A stretch of DNA of 64,000 nt from Pocillopora damicornis (lineage: Eukaryota). This document shows, one piece after another, positions 6,173 to 57,431 of this stretch. The translations under genes were made by a program, and so were the position numbers. Positions within the stretch are counted from its first letter, which is position 1; each line of letters begins with the position of its first letter. The notes beneath the pieces were generated by a model, which was not told where the DNA came from, ran no database searches, and saw only the letters and a program-made list of their open reading frames with translations. Location: NCBI RefSeq assembly GCF_003704095.1, contig NW_020847063.1, positions 62,001 through 126,000 on the forward strand, written 5' to 3'.

Positions 6173-6890
6173 TAGCATGCAGAGCAAACGTAATTTTTAA
6201 GCGAGCGAGTGCTCAGTATTTTCGTAAAGAAAATATGGCTGCCATCTTTGAAATTAATGGCAGCGGAAGGCTGTGGAAAGAAAGAAATTTATACCAAGGG
6301 GACGGTCGACGGTCAAAAATAAGGAGAGGGGAGGGGGTGAGGTGGGGTAGCGAAGAATACGCCTGCCCGAGGTCATTGTTTTTTTGCGAAACTCTGTTCG
6401 CCCACGAAAGGAGTTTCTGATTAGTGCGGTTAAGCTCCAGTTGTCAATCGCAAGCCAAATGTGTCCTTTGGACAGTTTGCTTTTACGGCAAAATGCAGAA
6501 GATGGCAAACTCATTAAAACTAGTTAGTGTCTTTTAGAATTTGATGTGTCTCACGCAAAAAGAACAAAAAGAAGCAATTTCTATACCGGTTTCTGGAAAG
6601 GATCTTCTGGCCGTGTTTCCAACTGGTTTTGGAAAAAGCCCGATAGTTCAGGTGTTAATTCGTATGAAAGAAATTATGGCAGGGAAACCTTCGAACGTAG
6701 TTGTCGTTTGTCCGCTGCTACGTATTGTTTATGGGCAAATGGAATAAGCATCTTAGATCGGATTAACGGTAGCTACGCTCATGGATTGTCGTTTGGAGGA
6801 TATATAGTCCGGCAAATATCAACTCGTATTTACATCAGCGGAGAACGTTTCGGTGAAGCCATTTTTTTCGTTGATGAAGAAAAAGAAAAC
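6173..6890 (+). mobile_element. Degenerate Academ(H)-like DNA transposon fragment with RecQ-type helicase remnant
   Basis: TAGCATGC start at 6173. Frame from 6541 reads EQKEAI..GKDLLAVFPTGFGKS..VVVVCPL..Q..I*SGKYQLVFTSAE (SF2 motifs 0, I, Ia, Ib) with three in-frame stops. Confidence 0.65.
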
Positions 6891-14306: not shown

Positions 14307-14406
14307 NNNNNNNNNNNNNNNNNNNNNNNNNNNNNNNNNNNNNNNNNNNNNNNNNNNNNNNNNNNNNNNNNNNNNNNNNNNNNNNNNNNNNNNNNNNNNN
14401 NNNNNN
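14307..14406. other. Assembly gap (100 N)
   Basis: N run following poly-C. Confidence 1.
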
Positions 14407-23085: not shown

Positions 23086-23185
23086 NNNNNNNNNNNNNNN
23101 NNNNNNNNNNNNNNNNNNNNNNNNNNNNNNNNNNNNNNNNNNNNNNNNNNNNNNNNNNNNNNNNNNNNNNNNNNNNNNNNNNNNN
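23086..23185. other. Assembly gap (100 N)
   Basis: N run. Confidence 1.
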
Positions 23186-35123: not shown

Positions 35124-35883
35124 AGTACTTTGCACGTGAACAGCTCTTACACGTACCAACCCCTACAAGAAATCCGTCACGAAAAGAGTGAAAGAAAGAA
35201 AGAAACAAACAAACACTGAAAAGTTAAGTGAGCATTAGCCTGATATCACCGTTAACAAATACCCCTCAGTTGTTATACTACTATAAGACTAGTGCCCTAA
35301 ATATTCGCGTCTGATTAGTTGACAGGAGATACTACATTCAATGAAAAATATGTTGCGTAGCGCAGAATTTCGCGCCAAAATAACGCGACTGCAGAATTTC
35401 CCAAATATGTATCATTTCGTAACTATCCATGTGTCAGCGAGGAAGCCATTGTTACTACTCAGCCTTGTTTGTATGGTGGCATTCAAACAATTTTAAGAGA
35501 GAATAAATAAACAATGCCACACAACACAATGACTCAGACCAACAATGGTTCCTTGAAAAACAGTGTACTATGGTATAAAATGGTTTCCTGTAAAGACCAC
35601 CATCTAAATTGCGATTTGTCACTCGCACAGAATTTTGCTGAATGTCCCGCTGTAACTCAATGATGCCTAGTTTGCATCCACAACGTGCAAAATGATCTAC
35701 ATCTTAACTTGTTTCTCTTGCTTCTTGCTTCTTGCTTCTTGCTTGCAGCCAAGTTAGGGCGGCAATCTCGAGAAGAGGTATTTGACGAGCTTCTGAAAGA
35801 TTTCATCTCACAGTCACACTCGTTACAATGCCAATTCTCTAGCCATTGTTAGAAGGTTTCCAACGGCATTCCAGGTGGGTTTG

Positions 35884-38800
35884 CTACGTTTCGTCTCTCT
35901 GAAGTTCGATAGCGGCCGGTGATATCGTAAGACACGTTATCCAAATGTTCATACTTTGTTCACTCGGTGCATACATAATGTATGTACGATCTGGAGTATC
36001 CACACAAAACAGGAACCGATTTTTGCTCTTGCCACACTTCTTGTGTTCGTACACACGGGTGATGGCCTTGCAGCTGATAGCTCCTTTGGGAATATCCGCC
36101 TAGCAAGAAAAATGACAAAATTGGTAATTCCACAATTTTCTCTACCAGTAAAACAAATCAAGTTTTTGAGTACTGAAATTATCTAACATTCACCTAAACA
36201 TGTACAATCTTGATCACAAGAGTTGGAAAATTTTGCAAAGCGTAATTACTACAGAAGAAACATCATTCGAACCCGACTTTTGGTACACGCTGGAAGCCAG
36301 GTACACCGGAACTCAACGCCACTGTATTTTAAATTCTTCTTTTTCAGCGGTATTACATCGCTTCATTTAACTAACCTTTTCCGTTTCAAAGTAAGCCAAG
36401 CATTTCCTAGTTAGGTCGAGGACAAACCATCGTCTCTTCCAACTCCTTCGAACCTCTGAAAAAGACAAGCAAAACATAACAGGTTGTTTTAGCGTACCTT
36501 TGCATCTTGTTCTTTGCAGTAGAAGGGGTCGTTGGCGAAAAAAGGGAACAATTTCTAAATAACATAATTTTTCACTAAAGGAAATTGACTTCAGTTCAGA
36601 TGACGCCATTAACACGTAAAAGAATAACAAGGAAAAAAACTTTCAAAAGGTTTACATAAACTTCAAACAGTTTATAGTGGTTAACAGTATTGCCTGAGAC
36701 GTAACTAAACCGAGCAGAGGCATGGCGAGAAACAAAACGGACGGAGTAGACCCGAGTTTGAGTGAAAGGAAGTAAAAGGGATAGCTGTTGGCGATGATCA
36801 CTTAAGTAATCGCTCGGCCACCGTCAATGAGGCGTGGGTTCGATTCCCGCCCTTCTCCTGTGGATTGATCAGGATGATTGCGATGCTGAATTACACAAAC
36901 GAGTAACTAACAAAAAGATATTTAAACCAATGTCTTTTTAATGCCAACATTTTTTATAACATAACTAGTAAATTTGTCTAATCAAATTCAATTGCGCGAG
37001 CGTGCTTCATATTCCTATTGTGCACGCTCATGACGTCAGCAAACAAATCCCTCGAGAAAAACAATTTTCCATCGGGTTGAAAATGTTATAAAACAAAACA
37101 ATTGGTTCATACGTCAGCTGTGCGTTCATCGAGATATGAAACACTTGGGACATTTGGAGAGCACTCAAGAAGCTGGCGTGCTCTCCAAACTTCCCGCGTG
37201 CTTCATAGCTTCATATCTCGATGAACGCACGCTGACGTACGAACCAATGGTTAATTCATCACGTATCACTTTTATCGTACATTTGGTCAGCTGATGCCTG
37301 TACCAATATTTTCTGTGGTAGTTCTTTGTTTCATACAAGAATCATCCGCGAAGAGAGGTGTGTAGCGAAGTGAAGATTTTAGTTACACTTCAATTTTGAA
37401 AAGAACCTACATAAATATAACGTGTCTACAGATTTTGTTGCAAATTGAATATAACTCGGCCGGTTTCTCTTCTCAAAAAAAGGGTCTATCTTTTTAGAAA
37501 ATAAGGCCTGGCATCCAATCACTGCTGATTTGGCTCAAATTTAACTATCATATGCTAGCATATCAAATGCAAGGCCACTTTGAATATTTTCCAAGACTTA
37601 CGTCCTTGTTTGACCATATAGCCACAGCATCGTGATTCAGTCACTATAACATCCTTCTCTGAACCAAGATCGATACCTAAACAACGATGAAAGCGAATTT
37701 ACAAACACCTATAAAATTAGCATTCGACCAAGGACAAATTTGGACGCAAGGAATGAGAGCTCAATTAATTTTTGATGATCCAAGATGGCTCCAACTCGTG
37801 CGTAAAGATTTTTTCAAACGTTGCAGATAGGTAAATTTTGATGTTCTGATTAAAATAAATAATATACAAAAAAGGAATTGCTCTTAAAAAATTAAAAATA
37901 CCATTTCAAGTCTCCTCAAGGATGGCGTTTATTTTGAAACATAAGGAATGTGTGGAAATCCTCTAAAGTGGATGGTGTGAAACGAAAGATCGATCTTTAA
38001 GTAACCTTTTTTCATCAGATAAAGACTTACTGCATTATGGCTGATAGATAGTCCTGTCAGGAGATTTTCTTACCTTCGCTGTCGAGGTACTCTTTTAGAC
38101 TGTTGTATTTCTCGGAGATGGGAAGATTTCTCACATCAGTGGTAGGCTCTTTTGTGAAGACAAATACACACAAAAAAATTAAGTCAACGAATGGAGTGAC
38201 AAAAGAGGTAACTTAACTTATTTATAATACCGTTCCATCTCTTCTCATTCCTTCTAGAACAGCTGATCATCTTTTTTCGTCATTATAACATTATCACGCC
38301 TTCATTATTATTACCACTACGATTAGTGTTGTATAAGGGTATATCGTACAAAACTCGAATATCATCCTTAGCTGTCATGCGGCCAACATTTTTTTAAAAA
38401 CATATTATTTTTGCTCATCACAATAGTCTAATATCTCTCTAAATTCAACGAAAGAGCTCAAAGATTACCACTCTGGCTTTTTAAAGGATTCTCTGGACAT
38501 TTTCGACTTTGCAACATGTAGAATACTTGTCACAAATACTGACATACAGCTTAGCTAACAAGCGAGTTCTCCACAGCTCGGTCGGTTAAGCATTCTTTAT
38601 TGCGACATCAGGAGTGCCTAAGCTGTGAGTCTTCACAAGGACTAAAAATTCTTCCGGAGTCTCTAGCTCGCTACAACTTTTTAACATATTTTTTTAAACG
38701 ACTGTTGCACTCTTGACTGACTCGAGGGGATTCAGAATCAATACGGCTTCATACATGCGTCTAAACCTAATGGCCTACCCAGCCGAAGCTTGTCCCGGTT

Positions 38801-41800
38801 TCCAAAGCATAAAGCGATTATGAGTATTACTACTCTCCCTGGATGGGATGCCAGTCCGTCACAAGGCTCCCGCCCTGCATTTCATCAGCCTTCCCTGACC
38901 ATTCGTTGGTCAGGGAACCCTTTACACTCGTGGGTGGTGAGATGCGGTTAGACTTAAGTGTGTTGCCCGAGAACAAAACACTAAACCCGACCGGGCCTCA
39001 AACCCACAGCCTTACGGACTAACATTGGGCCTTAACGGCTCACCGAAAAAACTTACCTGCATTGACAGCATTCACTATCTGCTCAGTGTAGAATTTGCTG
39101 CTCCCGACCCGTCGCAACAACGTTGTTTTCTTAGGAGCTCTTTTTTGCCGCAGATCAGTGGTCAACATATCATCCAACGAACGACTGCGTGTCATCCGCC
39201 TCCTCGGCATAGACAACGACTTCATAGATGACATCAGAGTATCCGGGTCCTCTTCGGACAGGTTAGAAGCCTCGCTTGGCCAGGTCCCGGATGCGTCAAG
39301 TCCGTTATCAAGCGAACTGTTCCTGCTACCCTTAAACACGCTAAAATGATCGTTTGAACTCTTTTTTTGCAAGGCACGGTGAAGAGTAGCTGTGTGGAAG
39401 GAAAATGTAGAAGAGTAATCTTCGGAGTCCACTTCGGCAAGTTTACGAATCAAACTGCAGTATTTTTCCTGGAGCTCCTGAAAAGACAAAATCAAGTGGG
39501 TGTCTCACAAAATCTGTAACCACCGTAAAATCCCAGCTATAACCCCCTCCCCACCCATCTTACAGGGAACAACGCACAACGTTCTCAGTGTGGTCTTTTG
39601 GCCAAAAAACGGCACTTGCAATGTTACAAGGCTCACGAAACCGCTGACCACATCATTGTCTTGAGCGTGAGCGTGATTCACGCGCCCTCTCTAAGCTTAA
39701 TACTTCGGAGAGAGGGTCAAATAATTATAAAAGAAAACAACAGCTTCTGAGAAACATTTAAAGACCATACCATGAAATCTTGTTTGAACAACGTCACATA
39801 TTATTACACGGCCACCAAACACAGGTTGCCATAACTACCACTATGGTCGCAGCTTGGAGCAGTGCAGTTTAGAGGCCCTCTGTCTCGTCGAAATGCCTCG
39901 GAAAGTGATCAGCCACCTGCCTTGATTAAACTTGTCGAGTAGCACTGACATTGACGTTTTAAGTTATTTTGTCATCAGTGCTAGCTCTTGTCAGCCATTG
40001 AATGCTGGAGAGGATGCTGCCAGCTTTCTAGACCAATCGTAGAGCGGGTTAAAGCCGAACCGATCTCATTCCAGATTGCTTTTGACACACTAATCAAAAC
40101 TGCCCCAAATCAGAGACGTTATTCAGGAAAGGAATTTTGAGAGGGATTTAAATATGTACGCCCAAATTTTGTTACCTCGTATCTATCTTCTAGTTTCAGT
40201 GCCTCCAGCTCGGCTGCTTTTGAAGCATCGTGAACATGATCATAACGATATCGATTGACATAGAATGACGACCACAATTTAAGATAAGGTATTCTGTACA
40301 GGGGACGAAGCACTCTGGGAAAAAATATAGAAACAAGCACTTATATAAGTTAAAGCAGTCAACCTTTTAAGTTATAACACGAACAAAAGTTTAGGTCACG
40401 GGGAGGACACCGTCAAGACCTAAGAGCAGACACCGGCACTACTATTACCTAATATCAAATTTTAAAATACGGCTTGTAAAATCATTTCTGACACGTTAAG
40501 TTATCGGTTCTTTCGAGAAACAGGCCCTTACACCCACACGTGGGTTGGTTTTGTAGTTAGCTCTTTTCCTTGCTCCTAAGCTATTTTGTCTGAATTCTCC
40601 TGGAATCCTCCCTCCATAAAAAACGCAAATTTAGATTTGACTTGGTAAAAGAGGAAAAAGACCATCAAAGGAGCAACAGGATTTGGCTTTTGACGCGAAT
40701 GATTCTGAGAAGAACACGTCTAAGTTAAAGTGTATCACAGCAACCTGCCCTCAGAATGCCGTTTGAAGTCAAGTTTACAGAGAGTCCTCCTCGTATACAT
40801 CTCCAGCACTCTGTCATACTTTAGTAGGAGTACCTTTTATAAATTCAAATCTGGCGCATTTCTATGGGTATAAAAATAACTCAGAGTTTTTTCAAAGTAA
40901 CAAAATCCCCCCAACAAGGGTTGACGAGAGGATTTGACGCAAACGTAGAGATTTTCCTCTTGAATCTCAGCGAACTGTTTGAGAGGGCGCCAGCGCTGAT
41001 TCAGGAATGAAAAGTTAACGCCCGTCCAGATTTGTCTCGTGAATTCATGTAGCGTCGTACGTTAAAACATTTTGTGAGGTGTAACCTTTGTGAGATTAAA
41101 AATTGAAGGAGTTAAAGTATCAAAATAAAAGCTGTCTTCAGAGCGAAAAAATAAATCAACACTGTTCACTGACTCCAGATTTACTTAACGGTGCTATGAC
41201 ATCCTTTAGAGACAACGGAAAAGGACACAGTGTTGTGATTTGTTTAAAAAATACTCGATTCATGGGTTAGTTGATTCTCACTCTAGTCTTACCTCTGTTG
41301 CTGTTGTTCCTTATAACGCAAATTGATGAACTTTTCAGGGTTTGCCATGGTAGTCACGTTTAACCAGGTCCAAAGGGAAATTGTCTTATCCTCATATTCT
41401 TCCTGTTAAGAAGACAACAAACCAATATTTTCCTTTTGAAAAATAAAGTTCTGAGTAACACGCACAATACAACTGCCTTCCATATACAAAATCATTTCAC
41501 AGGTCGAATTTGTTGATAAAACCGCTAGTGAGATTTCCGCCCAGCACCCTACTATCTTAAAACAAAGCATAGTCCCCGAGGAAATCTATTGTTTTCGCCA
41601 TTGTTTTCTTTGTATAGGTAATAACATGATTTCGGGAACAATTTGATGTTAATAAGGTAATTTAGTATTATAAACTGAGTTGATAACGTAAATTGGCCAC
41701 CGTAAAGATTTTAAAAGCTGACGTTTCGAGCGTCAACCCTTTGCTGCTCGAAACGTCAGCTTTTAGACTCTTTACGGTGTCCAATTTACGTTATTAACTC

Positions 41801-44800
41801 AGTTGATAATACTAAATTACCCTGTTATATTCTCCCAACGACGCAGCACCACAATTTCTTACCCCCTTATTCTTTGGTGTTAATAAGCACGAGTTAATAT
41901 TTCAAAGACAACAAAATTGCACGAAAAATCACGTTGTTACTTGTTAACAATTTACATGAAAAACGCATCACAATAAATCAAAACGGACGAAATTTTAGCA
42001 GCGCGCGCTATTTGTAATTTGCACTCGTGTTACAACTTACCATGCCAACCAGAAGCGCGTAAATTTTTTAATGCATATTATTAATTCAAGAACTGTGTGC
42101 ATCATGAAGTAGGGGCTGTGCAGAAATTTTACAAACCGTTACCAACGTTATGAAGTTTATCTTAGGAGTCAAGTACGCTTCAGAGTCCATATCATTTTTA
42201 TCTTCGTTATCATAAAGCAGGTGGATAATTGTAAGACAATAACCTCAGTTTGAGATTATAAGGAGTAACCTTACCTTCCAAACTTTTCCTTCAAATATGC
42301 TGAAAATTCGACTATGGCTTAACCCTTTATACCCTAACATCAGTATACAAGTTCTCTTTACTGTTCTCCTCACATTTCCTTTAGTATTTACAGGGAGAAT
42401 TTGTTTAACAATCAATCGCAATCATTTCCTGTATTCCCGTAACCTTAATATTTGATTCAGGGGGGATACTGTTGTAGAAATTAGATGGTTATCACTCCTA
42501 GGGGTTAGAAGGTTAAAACACTTCTCTATCAGACAGGTTACTATGGAATCTCAAAGTAAGATGGGAACTTAATTTTTAAAAATACTTAAAGATAAAAAGT
42601 ACAAAGCTTCTGAATCGTAGTCTTTCTTTAAACACGTGACAGAAAAAATACACACTGCTGTAAAAAATTGAGCGTCAACATACAAATAGATGAGGCTTGA
42701 AGTTACGTACCTCTTCTCTCTCGCTTTCTGCGTTGGCAATAAACGTTCCAAATCGCGAGGAATAAACGTGTTCTGCAATTACCTAAAACAGAAATAAGTG
42801 CAGTGAGGACAAGGTATAACTTATCAGGTAGCACCGTCCAACATTGGAAAAAGGCTGAAACTTCCACAAAGGCCGTGTAGTGAAAGACACATTAACAACT
42901 CTTGGTCTCTGTTTATCAGTTAGTTAGAGAGATACTTGAATGCGAGAATAAAAACGCCCATGCACTTGGTGGAGAAATACACTGCAAACCAGCGCGTGCA
43001 TCAATGCTGGTCATAACAACTGCGCGAGATATTCACTCAAGAGGTCTGCTGCGAGCGTGGAGATGGAAACTTTTTGTGTAAATCTTTGACTCTGCAACAG
43101 AATTTGGTCGCAGCAAAAGGTCGCATAATTTCCAACTGGCTTGAATTAGCACAACTTGGCATTGCCTGTTGACCCTTTCCCTCTCAAGATCTCATTAGTA
43201 GTTCTCCTTGTCGCCCGCCATCAATTCTCATAAGGTTGGTTTGGAAAACTCTGTATTGCATCATTTTATAACCCCCTTATTTTTATTTTTCCTCATTCTC
43301 GTCACACGTCTGCTTGATTTAACAANNNNNNNNNNNNNNNNNNNNNNNNNNNNNNNNNNNNNNNNNNNNNNNNNNNNNNNNNNNNNNNNNNNNNNNNNNN
43401 NNNNNNNNNNNNNNNNNNNNNNNNNTGACACCGCGCGTTATATCCGAACTTGGTATTGTAAGAAGAAATTCTGACTTGGCCACTGATGGGAGTTAAAGAA
43501 CAAGTGCCAATTTGCAGCTTGACCCTCACGATAAGAGCACACGAAGGTCGCGATGATAGCAAGAGAAAAACGCATTCCACAATAACGACGATTAACGTAC
43601 AGTGCCTTACATCTTACCTCAAGTAAAAGGCTGTTAAACTCGAACGAGAATGGAAACTGTTGAAGGACCTGCAAAGACAGAATCGTCGTTTTTTATCAGT
43701 CTGTTCCAGTTTGGAAAACGGAGCGTGATAGTAATTGGCGTGCTAGTTGCAGCGGAGGGAAAAAGAGGAGAGAGGCATGGGTCGGGTCACATAGCGAAGA
43801 AATCGCATGGCTTTCTTGACCAATCAACTCTACTTAAACTCCAGGTTGACCAATCCAAGCTCCCTTATACCTTTTTTTGTCTGTTTTCAGGTCGTAAGGA
43901 GTGACTTAAATAAGTGCAATATATCATGCCACCATCGGCCACTTTACCTGCCAAACACAGTCCAACCATTGAAGAAACACCGGACTGTAATCATCATGAG
44001 CCTGCGGGGACATGGTACGGGAGTAAAATTTGTGACCAAATGATAACCATTCCTTTTGAATCAAGATCTGGATAAAAGGAGACAAATCAGAAGTGAGTTA
44101 CACCTAACAAAATGTGAATAAGTTGAAGTTTGCAAGCAGATTTGACAAAATTGGATGAGATTTGATGATCTGGTGGTTAACTTGCTGGAAAAGTCTGGTT
44201 TCAAGTACCAGCTATAGTTATTGTGTCGTGTTCTTGTGCAAAACAAAAACGTCACGCATATGGGCATAAGCCCTCTTAGCATCGCTTTTGAGAGAAAATT
44301 CCATTGTTTTTAAACGTTTTGTCGAGGCTAGAAAGGCTAATTCACAGGAATATAGAAGAGGAGCAATTACACTTGCCGTATATGAAAAATTTATTTGAAC
44401 AGTAAAAAAGCTACTGTTTAGGGTTGAATAACTTAGTAGAGACAAGGTAAGGACGGCGAACAAACCTGAAAGCCAGCCACTGTCCTATAAAAAGGATCCA
44501 GCAACAACTGAGAAAGACTTGTCACCTGACAAACGATAACCCAATAAATAATATGAACCACTGAATATAACCAACGTTATTTTCAATTTCCATAGAGTGA
44601 GCGAGGAGAAAATACCACAACAAAATTAAGTGGAAAAAAACCAAACTGTTTTCTCATTTTGTAACGAAAATTGATGTAGAATTGTCACCAAAGGGCAATA
44701 ATGCATCTGATATGACGGCCCCGGAGAAAGTGATCTACAAAATGATTGGACGTCTTTGACAAGAGACCAAATTTGTTTTAGGTGGCTAAGCTTGAAATTT

Positions 44801-47800
44801 TGTCTCTATTCACTCGCTGGGTGCGCATAATTTAATGAAAAGTTGCTTCTGAAATGTAGTGGGATGCAACACAAGAGAACCGATGGTGGATTTAAGTATA
44901 TTGGTATAAAATAAACAGAAAAAAACCCTGACAGTGTCAGTCAATGCACATTCAGATAACTGCAGGTCAACGCAAACACAGGCACACATTCATTTGCGTT
45001 CATTTGTAACTCCAACTTGGATTATCTGAGCCTAAGAGGAGTTGCATTACTTTTGGGAACTTTTGCCTGAATTTAGCAAAATCGCCATTTATAACATGAA
45101 AATCTTCGCCATCTTCCACAATTCTCGTCATTGTTTTAATCTACTATAACGTCTTTACTGTTTATCCATAATAGCAGACTATTTTTAAACTTAGTCTAGT
45201 TTCCAAATGGCAGAAAATTGACTCAAAACATGAAGATTAGCGCCTGTCATTGAAAACACACCTGAGCTGTTCTGTCCATTCCGTCTTCATAACTGATCAT
45301 GACAGATGACTTGTCACAATCCATAGCAACTGAAATGTGAGTGGCTGTTTTGAGCAGCTCGCTGACTTGCATCAACCAATCACAATCATCCAGCGCAGAA
45401 AGCCATTTACTGTCATCACTGGAGGGTCAAAGTAATGCATTAGAGTGACGTAAAATGCAGTAACATGGATGGATTTCACACAAAAACACAACCCATTGTG
45501 ACTTGACCGCTTTCCCGCGCTAAAGGAAGGTTAAATGTATTGCTTTAACCTCTCACCATATGATACTTTCCTTTGTTCTTATTTCCCGTTATGATCACTT
45601 TGGTTTTAGTTTTACGACGCTGGATCAAAAAGAGCTCCATTAAAACCAGAAAAACCAACAAGATAATTCGGTTTTATCAACTGAGTTGATGATGCGAACT
45701 GGCCACCGTAGATAGATTCTGAAGCTCACATATCGAGCGTCAGCCCTTTGTCAGAGCGAAAGGGAAAAACAATAGGAATTGGAAAAACAACAGACATAGA
45801 AACTGACAAGGAGCAAACACTCAACATTCTCACCTTCTGTTTGCGAGAACTGCTTGAAGTTTGTACGCACTCTGCTTCACAGATTTGACATCTGGTATTC
45901 CCTCAGCATACATAAACTTGATGTTAGGATAATAGAAAGCTGAGACAAGAGAACGCAAAAAAAAATTATTATTTGATGTCTGCGTTAACTTCTGAGTAAC
46001 CCTCTCATAATCAGACGTTTTTTGCTTACTTAGGGTTACAACTGAAGCTGTAATAAATATAACAATACGTGAAATTTGTATTAAAATCAGAAATAGTATA
46101 AGACGACGAGAATGTAGCGATTTGAGTACAAAATCACCATTGAAAACAAACATCTTCTTGTAAAATTACCAATAAAATTTGGATGCCATGGAAATGTCAA
46201 TTCACACCAAACAGAAATTGACCCAAACAAATTATCACATGAATGTTGTTCATTTTTTAAAATCAGAGTACCATCCCCTTCTTTGCTGCATATAATATTA
46301 AGTGTGCAGAGGTCATTTTAGATCTGCAGTTTAAGTGTTACATCAGGGGGAGATGACTTACTCTCGCCTTCCTGTGGAGTGAGCTGTCCTGTCATTTGAG
46401 TCACTTGTTGAGAAGAGTTCAGTAACCCTCCTCCTGACTGTCTTATTCTAAAGCAGAAGACAACATCGGTTACCAACAAATTAAAAATTCGATTACGGGC
46501 GCCGCCATTTAGAAAAACAAATTGCGGAAACCACAAGGCTCAGGAGGAGACAATAACATTTAATTTTTTAAATTAATATTTCCTTTTTGGCTCTTCACAG
46601 TTTCGAATTAGAGCAATCAAAGTCATTTGATTACTCTTCATCTACAATTTTACGTACTGTTCAGTGAAAACAACCAGTTTTTCTGTAGCAGCTTCACTAA
46701 GTGCGCTGACTGTTACAAGATACTTCTCATCTGCTGGGCAACGCGAGTCTTTAAGGCCTCTGCAAGAAACAATTCGAACAAAATTAGTAACTTGAAGCAA
46801 AAGCCAAGAGATCTTTTTTCTAGGACGTGCTACAGATATTTTTTCTGCAACATTTACTTCAAAACGCTAAAAACTGAGGCTCCTCCCGAACGCAATCTCC
46901 AAACCGTCTTCCTCAGTTCCCTGAGGATACACTATTTCCTTTGAATGAAACAATTTAAGGATACATCGACAGTCCCTTACATTAATCAATGTTCCAACAT
47001 TTCACTTTACACTGACGATCTAAAGGATTCCTCTCACAGAAAGGCAACATCTCAATGCCCAGACCTTACAACCCGGAAACTCCCAAGATTTGATCTGTAA
47101 TTCTCTCTTCAAGTTCCTGCACATTTCTTGTACATCAGTTATGTATCACCAGTTTGTTGGATAAGATGTGTTGATATTGTAAGAAGCGAAATGTTAACTA
47201 ATGACACATGTCAAATGAGCATGTGTCAATCAAATACCACTGTTCGTACCTTCTGAACAATGCTGCAGGAGACCTTAACATGACTGCACCGCAATTGATA
47301 TGTCTCCAGCAAACTACTGGGAAACATCCTTCTCCTCTGCAAGAAGAAATAAAAACTTTGAGATAACGGAAAAATTACTCCTGGTCCTAGAAATTCCAGG
47401 ATTCAAGCCAAGTTTGCCATCAAGAGCAGTTGCATGAACAGCCAATCTAATTAAATACACTGCCGACCATCAATTATCTACCTGTGAACGTCAGCTATTT
47501 CAGTTAACTCCTCCTTTGTCACTGAAATCGGCACAACCACTTTTGCTGGATAGTGTAAAGGCCGTGTTCCTTCTGGAACAAGAATAAGAGGTTTTAAAAC
47601 TAAATTTATAACTAAAAATTTCGTTATAAATAAATTTAGCCTTATTTACTAGAAAGTGGTAGATAAACGAGGTATTTATTTTAGTAGTTACATGAAGAGT
47701 ACACAAGGAAATTCTTTTGGACGTGTACTCACTGTGAATTTGCCAGTTTCCAGTATGGAATAACTTGAGTCGGTCACACTCAACTGCAAAAAATTACAAC

Positions 47801-50800
47801 ACATAATACTTTCTAAAATGCGAACTTAATTAATTAATGGTGTATAGGAAATTTGTGTTCTGTATGTTTATTTCCGTCATCTTCGAAAGTCTTAAATGAA
47901 TTCCATGCAAAGAAAGCTCTCATAGTCATGAAAACAATTTGGCAATGATTCTTATCATGAGTCCCATTTTAATGTCGCATCCAACACTGACTGCAACGCC
48001 TCCTTTGAAAATCTAAAAGTTAAAAGTCCCATATTCTTTAGCCTTGTCACACCCAAGATCTAAAAGGTAATTCTCCTTACCGTCTGCCATACAATTCTTA
48101 TGATGTTAGTGTGGGGAATACTGGGTCAACTAATAATCCCCTGATTGATATTTCTCTTTATTATCATCATTTGGCTGCTTGATATTGTATTGGTATTGTA
48201 AGGAGATATTCAGTCTTGGTCACCCGTGGCAGTTAAAATGTGGGGGATAAAATCAAACCTATGAGGATTTGTGGGGTGATTACTTTTATTAGGAAATGAT
48301 GGATATGAAAACAGTCCATTTACCTTCAAACTTATAGAAGTTGGGAGCATCTTTACTGTCCAAAATAGTACATGACGTAGGCAGAATGATGGAGCTTTTA
48401 TAAGTAAAGGCAAATAACTTAGAAAAATCCTGCAAGAAATGGAAAAACTACCGTTACATAATACCATGCTCTAGCAGAGGATGTTTAAAGATTGTTATTA
48501 GTTCATTTTAAGGTGATTCCTTAGTATCACACTGAGCAACCTGTGTCGCACATAAAAAATATCAAAAATCAGGTGAATAGGCATGCCTGCAATCAGTTTA
48601 GAGCAAGCACAGAAACCCACTTTTTTATTGTAGTTTTCAAAACAGACTTTGGTAGGGAACATTTTTAATATGAAAAGTTTTAAAAAACCTTTGATAACTT
48701 TTTTTGTCTGAGGAATCATCTTAAGTTTGCTTAAAACTGGGAACAACCACTTTCCCTCTTGGTCACTTTAAAACAATTAAAAGAAAATCCACAACTGTTT
48801 GAAAGGGAGGTGTTAGTATCGCAATAATGAATAATAAAATTCTGAAATAATAATGAAAAGTAAAATTATTTTGAGGTGCTTATTAAGATACTTTCAATTG
48901 CTTCAACTCTTTTGTCACTGACTGCATTCCTGCATTCTTAAAACATTGTAAATGCTTTAAGTGATACCTGATCATAACAATTCAGCTTCAAGGCGGAGAT
49001 ACTAATTTCATCAAAGAGCCAATTAAAAACAGACCAAAAGTTAGAGGAAGAGATAGTCTCTTTAAAGAAGTTGTGCTACTTCTTGGAAAGAGCAGATAAG
49101 ATAACTTAGAGCTACATGTATCTCCTTCTGTGTAAGAAAGTGATGTTGTACTGGTACACTGGTACACCAGTACTACTCAAACATCAAACTTCCTGGTGGT
49201 CTTGCAATTAAGAGACATGTTATTGAGACACTTATTGAAACAAGTGTGCTTCTTGAAAAGGCCAGGGAATGTATCGGAAGGAGCTCCTTAAAATCAGTTG
49301 GTACACAAATTACCACTTACTATTTTTGAAGTTTGGAGAATGATTTTCATAACAGCCTCTGCATCAATTGTGGTCATAAGACCTGGACAGAACTAAAAAA
49401 GCACAATATATTAGACTCTGAGTTGAAAATAAAATATATGTACATGTTTAAACAAGTTCCATATACAACTTATGCTGTAGTCAATTGATACAAAAGCTTA
49501 AGATAATTACTGTAGTAGGTATGTATCCCTGTAGTGTGTGTATGAACTTGCTGTAATTTGCTATAATTTGACACACTGACCTGGTTCAGCTTAAAAGGTG
49601 GTTTAAATGGGGGCTTTTATTAACAATAACAAGGCCAGACCACGATACCAGGAGCTACATGCTGTATGGTCCCTACTTTGTTAACCAGTACTGAGAGGAT
49701 GTAGGAGACAGGACCTATAGTTTATTGTCCTTATCCAAGAAGATTACTGTAACAATGATTAACCATTTGCACATATCCTAGCAAAGGCAGTACATTCTCC
49801 TCAGTTAATTTAAGATCCTGAGTGTTGGTCCATTCTAAGGCTGAAACCCTCAACCTCCCCCACTGCAGCCTGGTGCTCTTCAATGTGAGCTAACCAAGCA
49901 CATAGTAAGAGCTGCAAGGATCATTTTTCCCAGTGAGTTACAGCTAGAATACAATGCACTTACCCTATGTGATTGGATGTTGCTACAGAAAATTTCAAAT
50001 CCATCCAACAAAAACATTTGTTTGTCTTTTGGCAAGTTCTTCTTGGAGAACTTCTTAATGTCAAAAATGCTTGAAAGAGGAATGGACACTTCCACTTCAT
50101 AACTATGATCTGTTTGATAAAAATAAAAAGAGAAAATGCAAAAAGCTGTTAGCCACAATAAGCACAAGGTGACATCATCTGATCACACTGTACAACTGTA
50201 TGTAATAACCCCAGGCTTTTGTACACGGGTGACCCTGGGAAACAAAAAGGAGAGTTCACAACTGTAGTGACAGTGTAAACACACTTGACACAACTATTAC
50301 TGTTACAATGCTCCCTTGTAAAAGTTGGAAGTGACAAATTTTGACTGCATGAAGAACTGCCCAAGAACATAACACATTGACCTGGCTAGGTCTTGAACCC
50401 AAACCTCTTAACCCAGAGTCCAGTGCACTGACCATTAACCCACCCTGTCTCCTACAGTAATTTATTTTGAATTTCGATACACAGCAATTATTGTTTTCTT
50501 TGATAGTAATGTTAAATGTACTAAAGATCAAGTAAGGTCAGCACAAAACAATCACACAGAATCTAAAAGACTCTAATGGACTTTTGTTACCTGCCTCTAA
50601 ACCCTTTAAATCCCAGAAGTGACTAACATGTAACTTCTCCCTATAATATCTATACTGTATCCAGAAAACAGGTAACGAGAACACTCAAACATATCAGGCA
50701 GAAGTTGTTTATCTTGATCTAACACCAAATTCTTGCAACTAGTTCACATGGATATGTGTAGCAGCAAAAAGGGAAAATTGTCAATCTGACCTTGTGAGTT

Positions 50801-53800
50801 AAAGGGTTAACTAGCAAAATTTTAGAGAGTAACAGTTGTTGTACTCACCAATATGTTCAATATTTGACAGAATTATTGGCCTCAGGGTTTGTAATTTGAC
50901 ACTCTGTTCACAAACACCTGGAAGAGTAGCCACTGCATGGTTCTTCCCTTTCATTGACTGGCTGTGCCGCAGTCCTCTTCTCACGCCACCTGATTTTATT
51001 TTCTTAGAAATATTATGAGCACTCAACCTTAAAAAAAAACAACAACAATGAGGGCAGCCTCAGAGTAAGAACACATAAAAATCAACACTCTGTATTCAAT
51101 CCAACCTGGAATCAATGTAAAAATGACAACTCATGAATTCAATTAGTTTACCACTGTCTGCTTTTCTTTCCATGCAATTAAAAAAAATGTATGTACTGGA
51201 GACTTGTGGCCCATTCAGCTAGAGCTTGTCCCTGTTTCCATTAGATAGTAGTTTTTACTGACTAGGAGTATTACTACAGTACTCTTTCCCAGATGGGATG
51301 CTAGTTTATTACACAGTTACCCCCAAGCTTCCCTGACAATTTGCTGGTACCCATTTATAACTCCTGAGTGGAGGGGCACTGTGAAAGTTATGTGTTACTT
51401 TTTCCCAAGAACACAACACAAGTAACCTGGTCAGACCCAATCAAACCCAGACCTCTCAAACCACAATCCAATGCACTAAACAGTAGGTCATCATGCCTCC
51501 CACATCTATTTAATGACCAAGATGCTACATTACACCACACCTTTTATTTGGTTTCCTTGGGTGAGTTGCTTCAAAACTCCTGATTGCGTGACATTTAGAG
51601 TGGCTAGGAGAGGCCTTCCTAGAGCTTGTTTGAAAGTGATGCCCTCTCCTTGCCACTTCCTCAGGATCAGCATCAACAAACTCATGTTCATCTAGGCCAT
51701 GCTGCAACAAAAAAAAATGTTGGAAGCTTAAAATTGTTTCTCACAACAACTAACAACATACATTATCATAAACAAATCTATCTTATATATCTTTTATGGT
51801 CCACTTTAGCCAATTTAAACAGACAGTCAAAACCAAACAAAGGCTACTCAAATCCAGCCTAAGTTATGGTTTGAAAACTAGTAGATCTAAACTTGCACAT
51901 TAACTGGTGTCCCGTGACCAAGGAGAAGGTCAAATGTCACCTTCAAACCAACAGTCTTTATGTATGTCCTGTACTTCCAAGATGTGAGAGTACAAATTAG
52001 AAGAATTACATGCTGAATTCAGTATCATAGGGTAGTTGGCTCATTACAGTAGCCACAACACGTCTTTGATTAATTTCTTATGGTTTCAGTGACACTAAAA
52101 CTAATAGCCCTACAGGGATTTCAATAACTTCTTTATAAGTAGTTTTAGATGGTGTATGAGGCAGCTATGCCGTAAGACAAAACCCAAACATGAGAGGCTG
52201 CTCACAGGCTAAACTGAAGATGGTGAGAGGTCTTAAATGCAGTGCTACACTAGCTGTAACCAGCTTCCATTGAAACCCTGGTTTTCATTGGTATGGGTAA
52301 TAAAATGATTTCTCAAGAATGGTGTAAACAAGCATAAGCAAATTTTTCAAAGACAACAAAATTGCACAAGCCCATAGGGAAAGTGCAATTTGTAGTCTTT
52401 GTGAAAAGCCTTAGGAAGTTTCGTTATTTTGTGGAAAGCTTTAAGATGTTTCCTTTTGCAGCTCATACTACTGCTCCATGATATACTAACTTAACCCTTT
52501 AACTCCTGTAAGTGACCAAGAAAGAATTTCTCCTAACAACATCAATACAATATCAAGCTGAAGAGTGATAAGAATAAAAAAAAAGATCAATTATGTGATT
52601 ATTAATTGATCCAATACCAAATTCTCCAAACTAATACAATAAAAATAATATGGTACATGATAGGGAGAATTTCTAATGATATCTTGAGAGTTAAAGGGTT
52701 AAAATGTATTATTGAACAAGCTTGCCAGAGCATAAACTTATTTGATACTCATCACTCATGAATGTCCACTTGCATGACAACAAGCAAAGAAATAAGAAAT
52801 GAGATGCTACGTGTATATTCCTCTTTCTCCACTCTGTTCCACCTACAATAACCACTAAAAACCCTTATCAGGATTTCTCTTTCCTCTATGAATGAATTAT
52901 CAATAGTTTTTTCCATACAACATTAGCTACTTTTTTATAATGATGAGAAATGCTCCCTCAAAAAAATGTGTCTACCTTCATATGAGAACCAGCAAAAATA
53001 ACTCTGTAGGTGGTGATGTGGAGTACTCCTTCTGTAATATCATCAAAGGTGTCCACACATGTTACATGATCCTGCTGTGAAATAATCTGCTCTCCAGGTA
53101 GCAAAGGTGGATGGGTGTAAAATTTTTCTTGACCACAGATCTTGGAAGGCTGAAAGAAGAGAACAAAGTGCAAACTACATCAAGGATTAAACACAGTGAG
53201 CCTCAGTTACATTTTGAGCATCTTAAACATAAAAAAATAAAGATTCCTTTTTTCCAGAAACGTTAATCCTCTTCAACTTAATGTAAACCAAACATATTGC
53301 TTTCCATTATATTTGTTGCCTGTTGATGTGTTTTCTAAGCCATGAAGAGTTTTTTTTCTTTGAACTCCCAACTGAAATAATTAGAAATAAATTATTTTCC
53401 TATGATCCTTGACCAGGCCAGCCAATTAAATTAAAAAACTGCTGTCTGCTTTCCAAAAAATATCATTTTGTGTCTGGTAGTCTTTCTAATTTGATTAAGA
53501 AAATATGGAATTAACATGTATTTATTTAATTGAAACAAAAAAATATTGAATGAATGCAAGTTATTATTTTGGTACTTGTGAACTACTGCTACTTCTCACA
53601 GTGTTCAGCAATATTAATGCATGAGAGAATTATGAGTGGCAGTTTCTGTATTAGTAGGGAATATGTATCAATAGACAATGTTTCAAGTAACATTAATTGT
53701 ATTAACTTCTTGTTAAAATCTCTTGTCACTAATTATCAGGATTACTTGAGATTAAAGAGATAAAAATGATTAGACTAGTAATATGATGCAATATTATTGT

Positions 53801-56800: not shown

Positions 56801-57040
56801 TTTTGAGTTCCACGATTGACAATCGTCAGATAACACAAACTAACCCTCACTTCAACAGAAATGAACTCCTGCAGCGTATTGGTCTTTGTTCCTCAATATA
56901 CGTAGTTTAGTTTAAAACATTAGTTTAAAACATTAGTTTTAAACAGTTGTCTCTAATATTTTACTTACCGATACGTTTGACGAAGGCGCTTCATTGAATA
57001 TCCTTAATAGCTGATCTGGCGTGATAGAGGTCCTTTCCAT
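35884..57040 (-). CDS. Myotubularin-related pseudophosphatase (GRAM, inactive PTP, coiled coil, C-terminal PH), 25 exons, ~979 aa; loosely MTMR5/13-like but without DENN
   Basis: Phase-consistent GT-AG exons in transcript order: 56969-57040, 52976-53149, 51541-51701, 50918-51027, 49964-50109, 49321-49392, 48324-48429, 47733-47783, 47482-47572, 47250-47336, 46658-46759, 46362-46447, 45834-45939, 45262-45418, 44466-44525, 43948-44067, 43618-43668, 42711-42782, 41293-41402, 40176-40314, 39057-39477, 38074-38148, 37602-37676, 36376-36455, 35884-36099 (2940 nt). Motifs: [103 protein letters not shown]. The first exon is the least certain. Confidence 0.88.
37097..37252. repeat. Foldback (long inverted repeat)
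   Basis: attggttcatacgtcagc.gtgcgttcatcgagatatgaa..ttggagagcac pairs with gtgctctccaa..ttcatatctcgatgaacgcacgctgacgtacgaaccaat. Confidence 0.8.
38765..39032 (-). mobile_element. tRNA-derived SINE
   Basis: Homologous to 51205-51502 (gagtattactac..gatgggatgc, cttccctgac, ccc.agaaca.aacac). Confidence 0.6.
41657..41872. mobile_element. Penelope-derived foldback insertion flanked by a 15-bp target-site duplication
   Basis: Near-perfect inverted arms of the same family as 27575-27895; flanks tttgatgttaataag (41642-41656) and tttggtgttaataag (41873-41887). Confidence 0.75.
42319..42516. mobile_element. piggyBac-type MITE
   Basis: TTAAcccttt...ggggttagaaggTTAA. Confidence 0.75.
43326..43425. other. 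Assembly gap (100 N)
   Basis: N run inside a myotubularin intron; the flanking exons join without a missing motif. Confidence 1.
45672..45760 (-). mobile_element. Penelope-derived repeat fragment
   Basis: tatcaactgagttgat..ggccaccgta..cgagcgtcagccctttgtcagagcgaa, a single degenerate arm. Confidence 0.6.
48037..48240. mobile_element. piggyBac-type MITE (degenerate ends)
   Basis: Internal sequence is the reverse complement of the 20406 element (cccaagatct..ctgccatacaattc..cttggtcac). Confidence 0.65.
49630..49897 (-). mobile_element. Probable tRNA-derived SINE of a second family
   Basis: Minus-strand head tggttagctcacattgaagagcac..gaggttgagggttt; the body is unrelated to the first SINE family. 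Confidence 0.4.
50358..50453 (-). mobile_element. SINE 5' head (tRNA-like)
   Basis: Minus strand TGGGTTAATGG (A box) ... GGTTCAAGACC (B box), followed by SINE body gtgttatgttcttgggca. Confidence 0.55.
50598..50810. mobile_element. piggyBac-type MITE
   Basis: ccctttaaatccca...gagttaaagggTTAA. Confidence 0.75.
51205..51502 (-). mobile_element. tRNA-derived SINE
   Basis: Same family as 38765 and 50358; decayed tRNA-like head at the right end. Confidence 0.6.
52491..52702. mobile_element. piggyBac-type MITE
   Basis: TTAAccctttaactc...gagttaaagggTTAA; close to the 20406 copy. Confidence 0.82.
54896..55107. mobile_element. piggyBac-type MITE
   Basis: TTAAcactttgactccca...tgggaattaaatggTTAA. Confidence 0.75.
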
Positions 57041-57431
57041 ACCCTTCTTGCAAACTAATAAAATTCATCGAAGGCCAACTACGACTTCCGTTTTCCTCAA
57101 CACCTCTAACCTTCCGCCATAACTCTCTCGAAGACATTAATCACGTGACACAAATAAATCAGAGTTCTTACAGAGATTCCAATTGGATAAGTTAAAACAA
57201 CCAATTGGAAGAGCTGTTGTACTCTGACTTTTTCGAGCCCAGGGTCCTTTTAGCTCCTTGTCAGCGGAATGGTAGCCCAATGCGTGAAGGGATTTCACGA
57301 TTTCACGGAAAAATGATGATGTAACACTTTGGGATCACGCCGAAATATGTGTGGTTGACTAGTAATTTCTATCCAACATTCTTCGTCTTGGTTCTAAACT
57401 GCTAAAAAGCGCAGAGATCTGGTCGGTGAAT
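57041..57431. promoter_or_regulatory. Bidirectional promoter region between the myotubularin-like gene and MTRR
   Basis: 391 bp between divergent ATGs; ACTTCCG (ETS-like, 57084), CCGCCAT (YY1-like, 57114), TCACGTGAC (E-box/CLEAR-like, 57141), two CCAATTGG palindromes (57179, 57201). Confidence 0.6.

What the first reader, a model, noticed from the sequence alone, without database searches (positions are those of the whole stretch)
35884..57040. Myotubularin pseudophosphatase with an unusual architecture: no DENN domain and a PHLDB/LL5-type PH module
Seen: the spliced product is a short N-terminus, GRAM, dead PTP, coiled coil, Ser-rich linker, then [58 protein letters not shown]...AITRVY...[27 protein letters not shown]. 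Known: the animal myotubularins with a C-terminal PH domain (MTMR5/SBF1, MTMR13/SBF2) carry a large N-terminal DENN domain. There is no room for one here because MTRR starts 391 bp upstream. From memory, the PH domain and its preceding segment resemble PHLDB1/2 (RYLPI..LK..G..V..CRGYLVK; FCVKTHDRLYYMVAPS.EAMRIW) more than the SBF PH. Inference: a distinct myotubularin subfamily or domain fusion that could target an active myotubularin partner to PIP3-rich membrane.
Basis: partly seen in the sequence, partly recalled or inferred. Interest (0 to 1): 0.75.

Follow-up and report, generated by a model that had tools for sequence, protein, structure and literature searches.

The report
Dead myotubularin with LL5-type PH domain
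This coral gene encodes a catalytically dead myotubularin that ends in a lipid-binding PH domain of the PHLDB/LL5 kind, and it belongs to an old, unnamed gene family shared by cnidarians and some sponges.

Summary
A 25-exon minus-strand gene (57040 to 35887) encodes 1002 residues. They match, with no mismatch, a public Pocillopora damicornis protein annotated only as "uncharacterized protein LOC113682448". The assembly gap lies inside intron 17, and no residue is missing across it. RNA contigs from four studies splice the PH exons onto the phosphatase exons.

There is no DENN domain. A stop codon lies in frame 8 codons upstream of the ATG, a diflavin reductase gene starts 391 bp away, and the contig has no DENN match. 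The canonical DENN-bearing SBF gene sits on another contig.

The catalytic Cys is Tyr in 16 and Ile in 2 of 18 aligned orthologues. The PH module with its N-terminal extension scores 79-88 bits against PHLDB-type proteins and 30 bits against mouse SBF1 PH.

Orthologues with this architecture occur in hexacorals, octocorals, a jellyfish, hydrozoans and homoscleromorph sponges. Their phosphatase domains form one clade (100/100), apart from the MTM1/MTMR2 and MTMR3/4 groups.

The proposed function is inferred, not shown: an adaptor that brings an active myotubularin to membrane rich in PIP3 or PI(3,4)P2. I found no description of this family in print. It is a new variant of a known kind, of moderate interest.

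The parts
56969..57040 (-). Exon 1: ATG and residues 1-24, the short N-terminus
   Evidence: In-frame stop 8 codons upstream. Donor GTAAGT.
52976..53149 (-). Exon 2: first half of PH-GRAM, residues 25-82
   Evidence: Pfam GRAM E 0.015, 15.6 bits, below the cut-off. 100% identical to P0185.
51541..51701 (-). Exon 3: start of the insert in PH-GRAM, holding the conserved acidic-then-ARRG..Q motif
50849..51027 (-). Exon 4: rest of the basic insert in PH-GRAM
49964..50109 (-). Exon 5: second half of PH-GRAM, residues 197-244
49321..49392 (-). Exon 6: linker from PH-GRAM to the phosphatase domain
48324..48429 (-). Exon 7: start of the myotubularin phosphatase-like domain (Pfam 274-630 on P0057)
47733..47783 (-). 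Exon 8: phosphatase-like domain
47482..47572 (-). Exon 9: phosphatase-like domain
47250..47336 (-). Exon 10: phosphatase-like domain
   Evidence: Pfam Myotub-related E 0.036..
46658..46759 (-). Exon 11: phosphatase-like domain. The region where active enzymes keep D.R is T.Q here.
46362..46447 (-). Exon 12: phosphatase-like domain, degenerate substrate loop
45834..45939 (-). Exon 13: phosphatase-like domain
45262..45418 (-). Exon 14: dead active site. S-Y-E-D-G-M-D-R stands in place of H-C-S-D-G-W-D-R.
   Evidence: Pfam Myotub-related 50.4 bits. Cys absent in 18 of 18 orthologues.
44466..44525 (-). Exon 15: phosphatase-like domain
   Evidence: Pfam 29.0 bits..
43948..44067 (-). Exon 16: phosphatase-like domain
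   Evidence: Pfam 56.0 bits. The best paralogue in the same genome is only 60% identical.
43618..43668 (-). Exon 17: last exon before the intron that holds the assembly gap
   Evidence: Phase 0.
43326..43425 (.). Assembly gap (N run), inside intron 17
   Evidence: No residue is missing in P0057 or P0185 across the junction. Not filled.
42711..42782 (-). Exon 18: first exon after the gap intron
   Evidence: Phase 0.
41293..41402 (-). Exon 19: end of the phosphatase-like domain
   Evidence: RNA joint 40314/41293 seen in 4 of 4 runs.
40176..40314 (-). Exon 20: C-terminal helix region and start of the coiled coil
   Evidence: RNA joints on both sides in 4 of 4 runs. Heptad spacing read.
39057..39477 (-). 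Exon 21: rest of the coiled coil and the Ser-rich linker with the [13 protein letters not shown] and VGSSKFYT motifs
   Evidence: One X13 contig links it to exons 19-20, and one X16 contig links it to the last exon.
38074..38148 (-). Exon 22: N-terminal extension of the PH module
   Evidence: RNA joints in 4 of 4 runs. Aligns with the PHLDB extension.
37602..37676 (-). Exon 23: end of the extension and first PH strand
   Evidence: RNA joints in 4 of 4 runs..
36376..36455 (-). Exon 24: PH strands with the basic W-K-R-R-W-F signature
   Evidence: Pfam PH weak, 16.6 bits. RNA joints.
35884..36099 (-). Exon 25: C-terminal half of the PH domain plus the TAG stop. The 3' UTR continues below 35500.
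   Evidence: Pfam PH 38.4 bits. RNA joint 36098/36375 in 3 of 4 runs, and contigs run on through 35500.
57432..59717 (+). Neighbouring head-to-head diflavin reductase gene (MTRR-like), a single open frame
   Evidence: It leaves 391 bp between the two ATGs.

Best explanation
Shown. This is the Pocillopora gene LOC113682448. It encodes a 1002-residue myotubularin pseudophosphatase. The parts in order are: a short N-terminus; a PH-GRAM domain split by a basic insert of about 113 residues; a myotubularin phosphatase fold without the catalytic Cys and without several substrate-pocket motifs; a short coiled coil; a Ser-rich linker; and a C-terminal PH module of the PHLDB/LL5 type, including that family's N-terminal extension. 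It belongs to an orthologue family with the same layout in Cnidaria and homoscleromorph sponges. The family is separate from the DENN-bearing SBF (MTMR5/13) genes and from the MTM1/MTMR2 and MTMR3/4 groups.

Inferred. Like other dead myotubularins, it probably acts as a non-catalytic adaptor. The coiled coil, and perhaps PH-GRAM, would pair it with itself or with an active myotubularin. The PH module carries the basic K..G..K-R-R-W-F signature of 3-phosphoinositide-binding PH domains. It would anchor the complex on cortical membrane where class I PI3-kinase makes PIP3 or PI(3,4)P2. That would place PI3P/PI(3,5)P2 3-phosphatase activity there, or stabilise it.
For: Gene model. 25 exons, 24 of 24 junctions GT..AG, and 0 mismatches to P0185. 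P0185 carries the NCBI names pdam_00010022 and LOC113682448. Six canonical splice joints link exons 19 to 25 in RNA contigs of four studies, five of them in 4 of 4 runs and one in 3 of 4. Single contigs bridge the phosphatase end, the coiled coil and the PH exons. Cluster members of 1002 aa sit on contigs of 3.2-5.0 kb, which must be spliced because the gene spans 21 kb.

Domains. On P0057, Myotub-related scores 283 bits over residues 274-630 and PH scores 70 bits over 896-989, with no DENN, 3-PAP or FYVE.

Dead site. Cys is absent in 18 of 18 sequences (Tyr in 16, Ile in 2), while the Arg of CX5R is invariant. Of 64 columns nearly invariant in 23 active-type myotubularins, 35 are kept and 12 are lost in at least 13 of 14 family rows. 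The lost ones include SQP, D.R, G.E, NIH and HCS.

No DENN. SBF lies elsewhere, on C2509.

Family. 14 of 21 hits and 19 of the 120 listed hits carry PF06602 plus PF00169. The named ones are cnidarian or homoscleromorph sponge, and the rest are unnamed Logan contigs. The family clade has 100/100 support, appears in 100% of 200 bootstrap trees, and its inner branching follows the species tree.

PH type. The extension adds 10-18 bits for PHLDB-type proteins but only 3 bits for a myosin PH.

Background. Inactive myotubularins act as scaffolds that pair with active ones through a coiled coil (PMC8269279, passages read). The Phldb2 PH domain is highly sensitive to PIP3 (PMC6416313, abstract in the listing).
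Against: No lipid-binding, dimerisation or localisation data exist for any member.

The coiled coil rests on heptad spacing read from the sequence (residues 709, 713, 716, 720, 723, 727, 730). It also rests on the PDB match to MTMR1 reaching residue 743.

GRAM is below Pfam's cut-off.

The phosphatase tree has no MTMR5/13, 6-8, 9, 10-12 or 14 rows, so separation from those groups is not shown by the tree.

The protein Atlas puts a chordate myotubularin-plus-PH cluster first (0.94) and MTMR10/12 clusters (0.91) just above MTMR1 clusters (0.90).

The first PH exon of the coral SBF gene is 60% identical over 25 residues.

The PH tree is a quick tree on 98 columns. The group joining the family with PHLDB has 94 SH-aLRT support, is not starred, also holds a myosin PH, and does not resolve the family as one clade.
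Confidence: 0.6

Rival explanations
1. It is a stand-alone cortical scaffold or lipid reader, not a partner of an active myotubularin. The PH module would place it at the cortex as in LL5 proteins. The dead phosphatase fold, the insert and the Ser-rich linker would bind other proteins, or the pocket would hold a lipid without cleaving it.
For: The Arg and Asp of the P-loop and the C-terminal half of the fold are conserved. Conserved linear motifs lie in the insert and the linker: [18 protein letters not shown] and VGSSKFYT. PHLDB proteins are themselves scaffolds (listing and abstracts).
Against: Twelve pocket positions are lost, among them SQP, D.R, G.E and NIH, which argues against lipid binding in the old pocket. 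The coiled coil sits where other myotubularins have theirs, and pairing with active members is the common role of the dead ones (PMC8269279).
Confidence: 0.3
2. Two neighbouring genes, a myotubularin-related gene and a PHLDB-like gene, were wrongly read as one.
For: The PH module resembles PHLDB. Some public gene predictions (P0001-P0003, 153-159 aa) hold only the last PH exon.
Against: RNA contigs of four studies splice exons 19 through 25 with canonical ends, and single contigs bridge them. Full-length proteins of about 1000 aa are known from many transcript contigs and from RefSeq of three Pocillopora species. The same fusion occurs in sponges, hydrozoans and a jellyfish. The coral's own PHLDB-type PH exon lies on another contig.
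Confidence: 0.02
3. It is an SBF (MTMR5/13) gene whose DENN exons were missed or lie further upstream.
For: It shares the layout of phosphatase fold plus C-terminal PH. NCBI names the Dendronephthya orthologue 'MTMR13-like'. The nearest Atlas cluster is a myotubularin-plus-PH cluster. That cluster vanished when clusters with DENN, SBF2, 3-PAP, FYVE or MTMR6-type PH-GRAM members were skipped. The first PH exon of the coral SBF is 60% identical over 25 aa.
Against: None of the 11 DENN matches in the genome is on this contig. A stop lies in frame upstream of the ATG, and another gene starts 391 bp away. The genome has a separate locus with DENN and myotubularin domains together. Mouse SBF1 PH scores 30.4 bits against 79-88 bits for PHLDB-type proteins. 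The last PH exon finds no match at the SBF locus even at E up to 10.
Confidence: 0.03

Closest known systems
MTMR5/SBF1 and MTMR13/SBF2 (the 'R5' dead myotubularins)
   Same: A dead myotubularin phosphatase fold, a coiled coil and a C-terminal PH domain. The presumed role is as an adaptor for an active myotubularin.
   Different: No DENN domain. The active-site remnant keeps D-R-T-A-Q. The PH domain is only 30.4 bits from mouse SBF1 PH. The coral has its own SBF locus on another contig.
PHLDB1/2/3 (LL5 proteins)
   Same: A C-terminal PH module with the same N-terminal extension. Identity is 38% over 137 aa with an annelid PHLDB-like protein. It is 39% over 143 aa with the coral's own PHLDB-type exon. 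Scores are 79-88 bits.
   Different: The rest of the protein is a myotubularin, not the long coiled-coil or FHA scaffold. The PH module is split over four exons here but is a single exon in the coral PHLDB-type gene.
MTM1/MTMR1/MTMR2 ('M1' active group)
   Same: These give the highest-scoring solved structures (MTMR1 246.5 bits, MTMR2 240.1 bits). Identity is about 44% in the conserved half of the phosphatase domain. The order PH-GRAM, phosphatase, coiled coil is the same.
   Different: The catalytic Cys and 11 other conserved positions are lost. The protein has an extra insert in PH-GRAM and an extra PH domain. It forms a separate clade in the tree.
Unplaced sequences in the 2010 myotubularin survey (Kerk and Moorhead, PMC2927912)
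   Same: That survey lists six metazoan groups plus a C2-domain clade. [quoted passage not shown] Nv82921 may be the Nematostella member of this family.
   Different: The main text gives no architecture for Nv82921.

Membership tests
Myotubularin family | Myotubularin-like phosphatase domain (PF06602) | tested here: met
   283 bits over residues 274-630 of P0057. Three single exons of the window score over the cut-off.
Myotubularin family | N-terminal PH-GRAM domain | tested here: inconclusive
   GRAM scores 15.6 bits on exon 2 against a cut-off of 23.6, and 16.4 bits on P0027. The conserved L-L-P-G-E and L-T-x-Y-R-x-x-F motifs are visible in the alignment.
Active myotubularins | C-x5-R catalytic loop (H-C-S-D-G-W-D-R) | tested here: not met
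   Cys is replaced by Tyr in 16 and Ile in 2 of 18 sequences, while the Arg is kept in 18 of 18. Twelve of 64 conserved columns are lost.
Myotubularin family | [quoted passage not shown] | tested here: inconclusive
   Hydrophobic residues fall at 709, 713, 716, 720, 723, 727 and 730, a 4-3 spacing. The PDB match to MTMR1 extends to residue 743. No predictor was run.
MTMR5/13 (SBF, R5 group) | N-terminal DENN domain | tested here: not met
   The genome has 11 DENN matches on 5 contigs and none on this contig. Pfam finds none on P0057 or on 5 orthologues. A stop lies in frame upstream of the ATG.
MTMR5/13 (SBF, R5 group) | C-terminal PH domain of the SBF type | tested here: not met
   A PH domain is present, but it scores 30.4 bits against mouse SBF1 PH (ninth PDB hit). 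It scores 79-88 bits against PHLDB-type proteins. The coral SBF locus matches only 25 aa and gives no match for the last exon.
MTMR5/13 (SBF, R5 group) | Phosphatase domain falls in the R5 clade | not tested
   I could not obtain any R5 sequence for the tree. Exon 16 is 53% identical to the coral SBF exon and 60% identical to the best paralogue.
MTMR10/11/12 (R10 group) | 3-PAP domain (PF12578) | tested here: not met
   No PF12578 on P0057 or on the orthologues. The whole-genome scan for PF12578 found nothing anywhere and its control rang nowhere, so that scan is uninformative.
PHLDB/LL5 | C-terminal PH domain with the family's N-terminal extension | tested here: met
   The BLASTP alignment covers residues 854-988, extension included. 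The same holds for the tblastn match to the coral PHLDB-type exon. The extension adds 10-18 bits for PHLDB-type proteins. One such cluster holds an oyster protein named PHLDB2.
PHLDB/LL5 | Long coiled-coil or Ser-rich scaffold N-terminal to the PH domain, with no enzyme fold | tested here: not met
   The N-terminal 850 residues are PH-GRAM plus a myotubularin fold. It shares the module but is not a family member.
3-phosphoinositide-binding PH domains | A basic residue in the first strand, then [K/R]-x-R followed by two hydrophobic residues in the second strand (signature recalled from the literature) | tested here: met
   K902, G904, W910, R913, W914, F915 and Y926 are invariant in 18 of 18 sequences. 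The closest solved PH domain is the TAPP1 C-terminal PH, E 6.5e-12. Lipid binding itself cannot be tested here.

The most novel reading that the evidence does not exclude
This is a seventh ancient animal myotubularin lineage: a dead enzyme fused to an LL5-type PH module before sponges and cnidarians split, and later lost in bilaterians. It would couple class I PI3-kinase products at the cell cortex to turnover of PI3P and PI(3,5)P2. Bilaterians would have to make that link by other means. Its PH module and that of PHLDB/LL5 would share one origin by exon shuffling.
Probability: 0.35. Interest if true: 0.65.

Novelty: new variant of a known kind. Interest (0 to 1): 0.5.

Why it matters
The animal myotubularin family is usually described as six groups, three active and three dead, already complete at the base of animals (PMC2927912, section 7). 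This gene points to a further dead lineage with its own architecture, conserved from homoscleromorph sponges to corals, jellyfish and hydrozoans. Public annotation names it inconsistently: 'uncharacterized', 'myotubularin', 'MTMR2' and 'MTMR13-like'.

If the adaptor model holds, it gives a testable link between PIP3 or PI(3,4)P2 signalling and 3-phosphatase targeting in early-branching animals. It would also be a natural example of how dead enzymes gain new targeting modules. It does not overturn any concept, so the interest is moderate.

Tried and rejected
Two-gene reading: rejected by the RNA joints.

SBF with hidden DENN: rejected.

Coral-only fusion or annotation artefact: rejected by orthologues in other classes and in sponges.

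Solved PHLDB PH structures: none in the PDB copy. The nearest PH is TAPP1.

Protein Atlas. The first hit was a chordate myotubularin-plus-PH cluster. I first took it for possible chordate orthologues. It vanished when clusters with DENN, uDENN, dDENN, SBF2, 3-PAP, MTMR6-type PH-GRAM or FYVE members were skipped. It is therefore probably SBF-type, but I cannot tell which skipped family removed it.

Whole-genome scan for 3-PAP: uninformative.

Word search with the hydrozoan-like P0027: only 5 proteins.

Paper searches. 'Myotubularin' with Nematostella/pseudophosphatase, PHLDB, or cnidaria found no description of this architecture. One search was badly framed and returned unrelated papers. PMC9909359 mentions myotubularins only as a Pfam target.

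Absence from bilaterians is not shown. Only the best 120 of 504 hits were listed, and the divergent hydrozoan members were themselves not among them. One row (P0074, a moth protein with an oddly high score for 44% identity) was not examined.

Rows left out of the trees. Acropora P0059 was left out because its model lacks the active-site exon. P0004 and several near-identical coral transcripts were also left out. In the PH tree, domains covering fewer than 70 query positions were dropped.

Full report
What is in the window. Scanned exon by exon, Pfam finds the myotubularin phosphatase domain in 5 of 10 ORF pieces, 3 of them over the cut-off (50.4, 29.0 and 56.0 bits). It finds a weak GRAM match in one piece (15.6 bits, below the 23.6 cut-off). 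It finds PH in 2 of 10 further pieces, with the last exon at 38.4 bits.

A public protein that equals the product. An exhaustive HMMER search with the last PH exon alone gave 47 proteins at E up to 0.001. It led to full-length database proteins. One of them, P0185, carries the NCBI names 'hypothetical protein pdam_00010022' and 'uncharacterized protein LOC113682448 [Pocillopora damicornis]'.

Gene model and the gap. Aligning P0057 and P0185 to the window gives 25 coding exons. All 24 of 24 junctions have GT..AG ends in a consistent phase. The exons add up to 3006 nt, or 1002 codons. Each exon translated on its own shows no mismatch to P0185 over whole codons. So the window is very probably P. 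damicornis.

The assembly gap 43326-43425 lies inside intron 17. The flanking exons end and start in phase 0 with normal splice signals, and no residue is missing across the junction.

Transcript evidence. I laid contigs of four RNA runs from four studies on 35500-41450 (5,951 letters). Six joints with CT..AC ends, which read GT..AG on the minus strand, match the predicted junctions of exons 19 to 25. Five are seen in 4 of 4 runs and one (36098/36375) in 3 of 4.

One X16 contig joins the last PH exon to exon 21. One X13 contig joins exons 21, 20 and 19. One X3 contig runs from exons 20-19 for another 2 kb of record. Three other small skips inside 37000-37261 occur in single runs, lack splice ends and lie in a repeat. 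These data are contigs, so they show presence, not level.

I laid no reads on exons 1-18. For these the support is different. Of the 15 cluster members listed, 12 are 1002 aa, and the Logan ones lie on contigs of 3.2-5.0 kb. Those contigs must be spliced, because the gene spans 21 kb. RefSeq models of three Pocillopora species agree.

No DENN. The ATG at 57040 is preceded by an in-frame stop 8 codons upstream. A plus-strand ORF with flavodoxin, FAD-binding and NAD-binding domains has its first ATG at 57432, 391 bp away. The genome has 11 DENN matches on 5 contigs and none on this contig. DENN and myotubularin matches occur together only on contig C2509, which is the canonical SBF gene. The full-length orthologues are 919-1035 aa with equally short N-termini.

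A dead enzyme. Eighteen orthologues were aligned (A1). The catalytic Cys position is Tyr in 16 sequences and Ile in 2 (both hydrozoan), and never Cys. The Arg of the loop is invariant.

Of 64 columns nearly invariant in 23 active-type myotubularins, 35 are kept in at least 13 of 14 family rows. Twelve are lost, and the rest are mixed. The lost ones include the S-Q-P, D.R, G.E, N-I-H and H-C-S positions. The fold is therefore conserved while the pocket has decayed.

The PH module. The 148-residue C-terminal module of the public protein was scored with phmmer. Against proteins with the PHLDB hallmark segment it gives 88.5, 86.3, 83.8 and 78.6 bits. One of these clusters holds an oyster protein named 'Pleckstrin-like protein domain family B member 2'. 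A myosin PH scores 73 bits.

Among solved structures, TAPP1 scores 48.7 bits and mouse SBF1 PH 30.4 bits, the ninth hit. Cutting the query to the PH core lowers the PHLDB-type scores by 10-18 bits but the myosin score by only 3 bits. So the segment before the PH domain is shared specifically with PHLDB. BLASTP aligns 137 residues at 38% identity, extension included.

In the coral's own genome, the best match of the module is a single exon on contig C2698. That exon is 49-50% identical to annelid and oyster PHLDB-type proteins and 39% identical to this module over 143 residues. The SBF locus matches only 25 residues, at 60% identity.

A quick tree of 68 PH domains on 98 columns groups all 15 family rows with the 5 PHLDB rows, one myosin PH and one fragment. 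Support is 94 SH-aLRT, not starred. PHLDB itself forms a clade at 98. No SBF or TAPP sequence was available for that tree.

The family. Proteins with the myotubularin and PH domains and no DENN turn up in several groups:
- stony corals;
- sea anemones (Nematostella, Actinia, Actinostola);
- octocorals (Dendronephthya, Xenia);
- a scyphozoan (Rhopilema);
- hydrozoans (Clytia, plus one unnamed transcript);
- homoscleromorph sponges (Oscarella lobularis, O. pearsei, Corticium).

Of the 120 rows listed, 19 have this domain pair. None of the 19 is bilaterian by name, and none of the 120 carries DENN.

A careful maximum-likelihood tree of the phosphatase domain used 37 rows and 382 columns. The 14 family rows form one clade with 100/100 support, found in 100% of 200 bootstrap trees. 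Sponges, medusozoans, octocorals and hexacorals branch as in the species tree. The MTMR3/4 rows (100/99) and the MTM1/MTMR2 rows (87/70) are separate, and deeper branches are unresolved.

The tree has no MTMR5/13, 6-8, 9 or 10-12 rows, because I could not obtain them. Within the coral genome, the most conserved exon is at most 60% identical to any of the other seven myotubularin loci.

How it probably works. This part is inference. Dead myotubularins are described as scaffolds that pair with active ones through a conserved coiled coil, and that raise their activity, stability or targeting (PMC8269279, passages). This protein has hydrophobic residues in 4-3 spacing at 709-730, in the place where MTMR1 and MTMR2 have their coiled coil.

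Its PH domain keeps the basic signature of 3-phosphoinositide binders in all 18 sequences. The signature itself is recalled from the literature. The PH domain resembles those of TAPP1 and PHLDB. The PH domain of Phldb2 is reported as highly sensitive to PIP3 (PMC6416313, abstract only).

The likeliest role is an adaptor that places or stabilises an active myotubularin on PIP3- or PI(3,4)P2-rich cortical membrane. A stand-alone scaffold role is the main rival.

Against my reading.
- GRAM is below threshold.
- The Atlas ranks a myotubularin-plus-PH cluster first and MTMR10/12 clusters just above MTMR1 clusters.
- The PH tree is weakly supported.
- Absence from bilaterians is not shown.

Known or new. 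The gene model is public but unnamed, and orthologues carry four different names. The 2010 survey of myotubularins recognises six animal groups and a C2-domain clade, and it leaves Nv82921 unplaced (PMC2927912, section 7 and a term search). That sequence may belong here. The supplementary files that could tell were closed.

Five paper searches found no description of a DENN-less myotubularin with a PHLDB-type PH domain. I rate it a new variant of a known kind.

Noticed in passing
window 36893-37290 (intron 23): RNA contig depth jumps to about 1400-6500, against roughly 100-300 on the exons (2-12 in X13), in all four runs. There are many loose ends and odd skips. This looks like an expressed repeat family inside the intron.
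   Followed up: no
window 57426-59717 (+): The neighbouring diflavin reductase (flavodoxin, FAD-binding and NAD-binding domains; MTRR-like) is one uninterrupted open frame of 763 codons. It lies head to head with this 25-exon gene, 391 bp between the ATGs. It may be an intronless gene sharing a bidirectional promoter.
   Followed up: partly
window 50849-51701 (exons 3-4); P0185 residues 83-195: An insert of about 113 residues splits the PH-GRAM domain. It is mostly basic and variable, but it holds a motif (acidic run, then A-R-R-G-x-x-x-Q) that is recognisable from sponges to corals in alignment A1.
   Followed up: partly
window 39057-39477 (exon 21); P0185 residues about 805-845: The linker holds two conserved short motifs, [13 protein letters not shown] (S814 nearly invariant) and V-G-S-S-K-F-Y-T (F843 invariant in 18 of 18). 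A basophilic kinase site or a docking site is possible.
   Followed up: no
L006:6628-7035 (-), = G000:C2698: The coral's own PHLDB-type PH module, extension included, is a single exon. The related module of this gene is split over four exons.
   Followed up: partly
P0001-P0003: Three database proteins of 153-159 aa hold only the last PH exon of this family, behind unrelated residues. They look like mispredicted gene fragments from other coral assemblies.
   Followed up: no
Orthologues are named inconsistently in public records. The names include 'myotubularin isoform X2' (Nematostella), 'Myotubularin-related protein 2' (Acropora cervicornis, Corticium) and 'myotubularin-related protein 13-like' (Dendronephthya). 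Others are 'myotubularin-like' (Xenia, Clytia) and 'uncharacterized protein' (Pocillopora, Actinia, Rhopilema, Oscarella).
   Followed up: yes
window 35716 (3' UTR): Seven bases of the assembly are absent from the RNA contigs of three of four runs. Several single-base differences are also shared between runs. These are probably strain or species polymorphisms.
   Followed up: no
row P0074: A moth (Plutella) protein of 743 aa scores 330 bits at only 44% identity and 78% coverage, far above other MTMR2-type rows at the same identity. Not examined.
   Followed up: no
window 14307-14406 and 23086-23185: Two further assembly gaps lie outside the finding.
   Followed up: no
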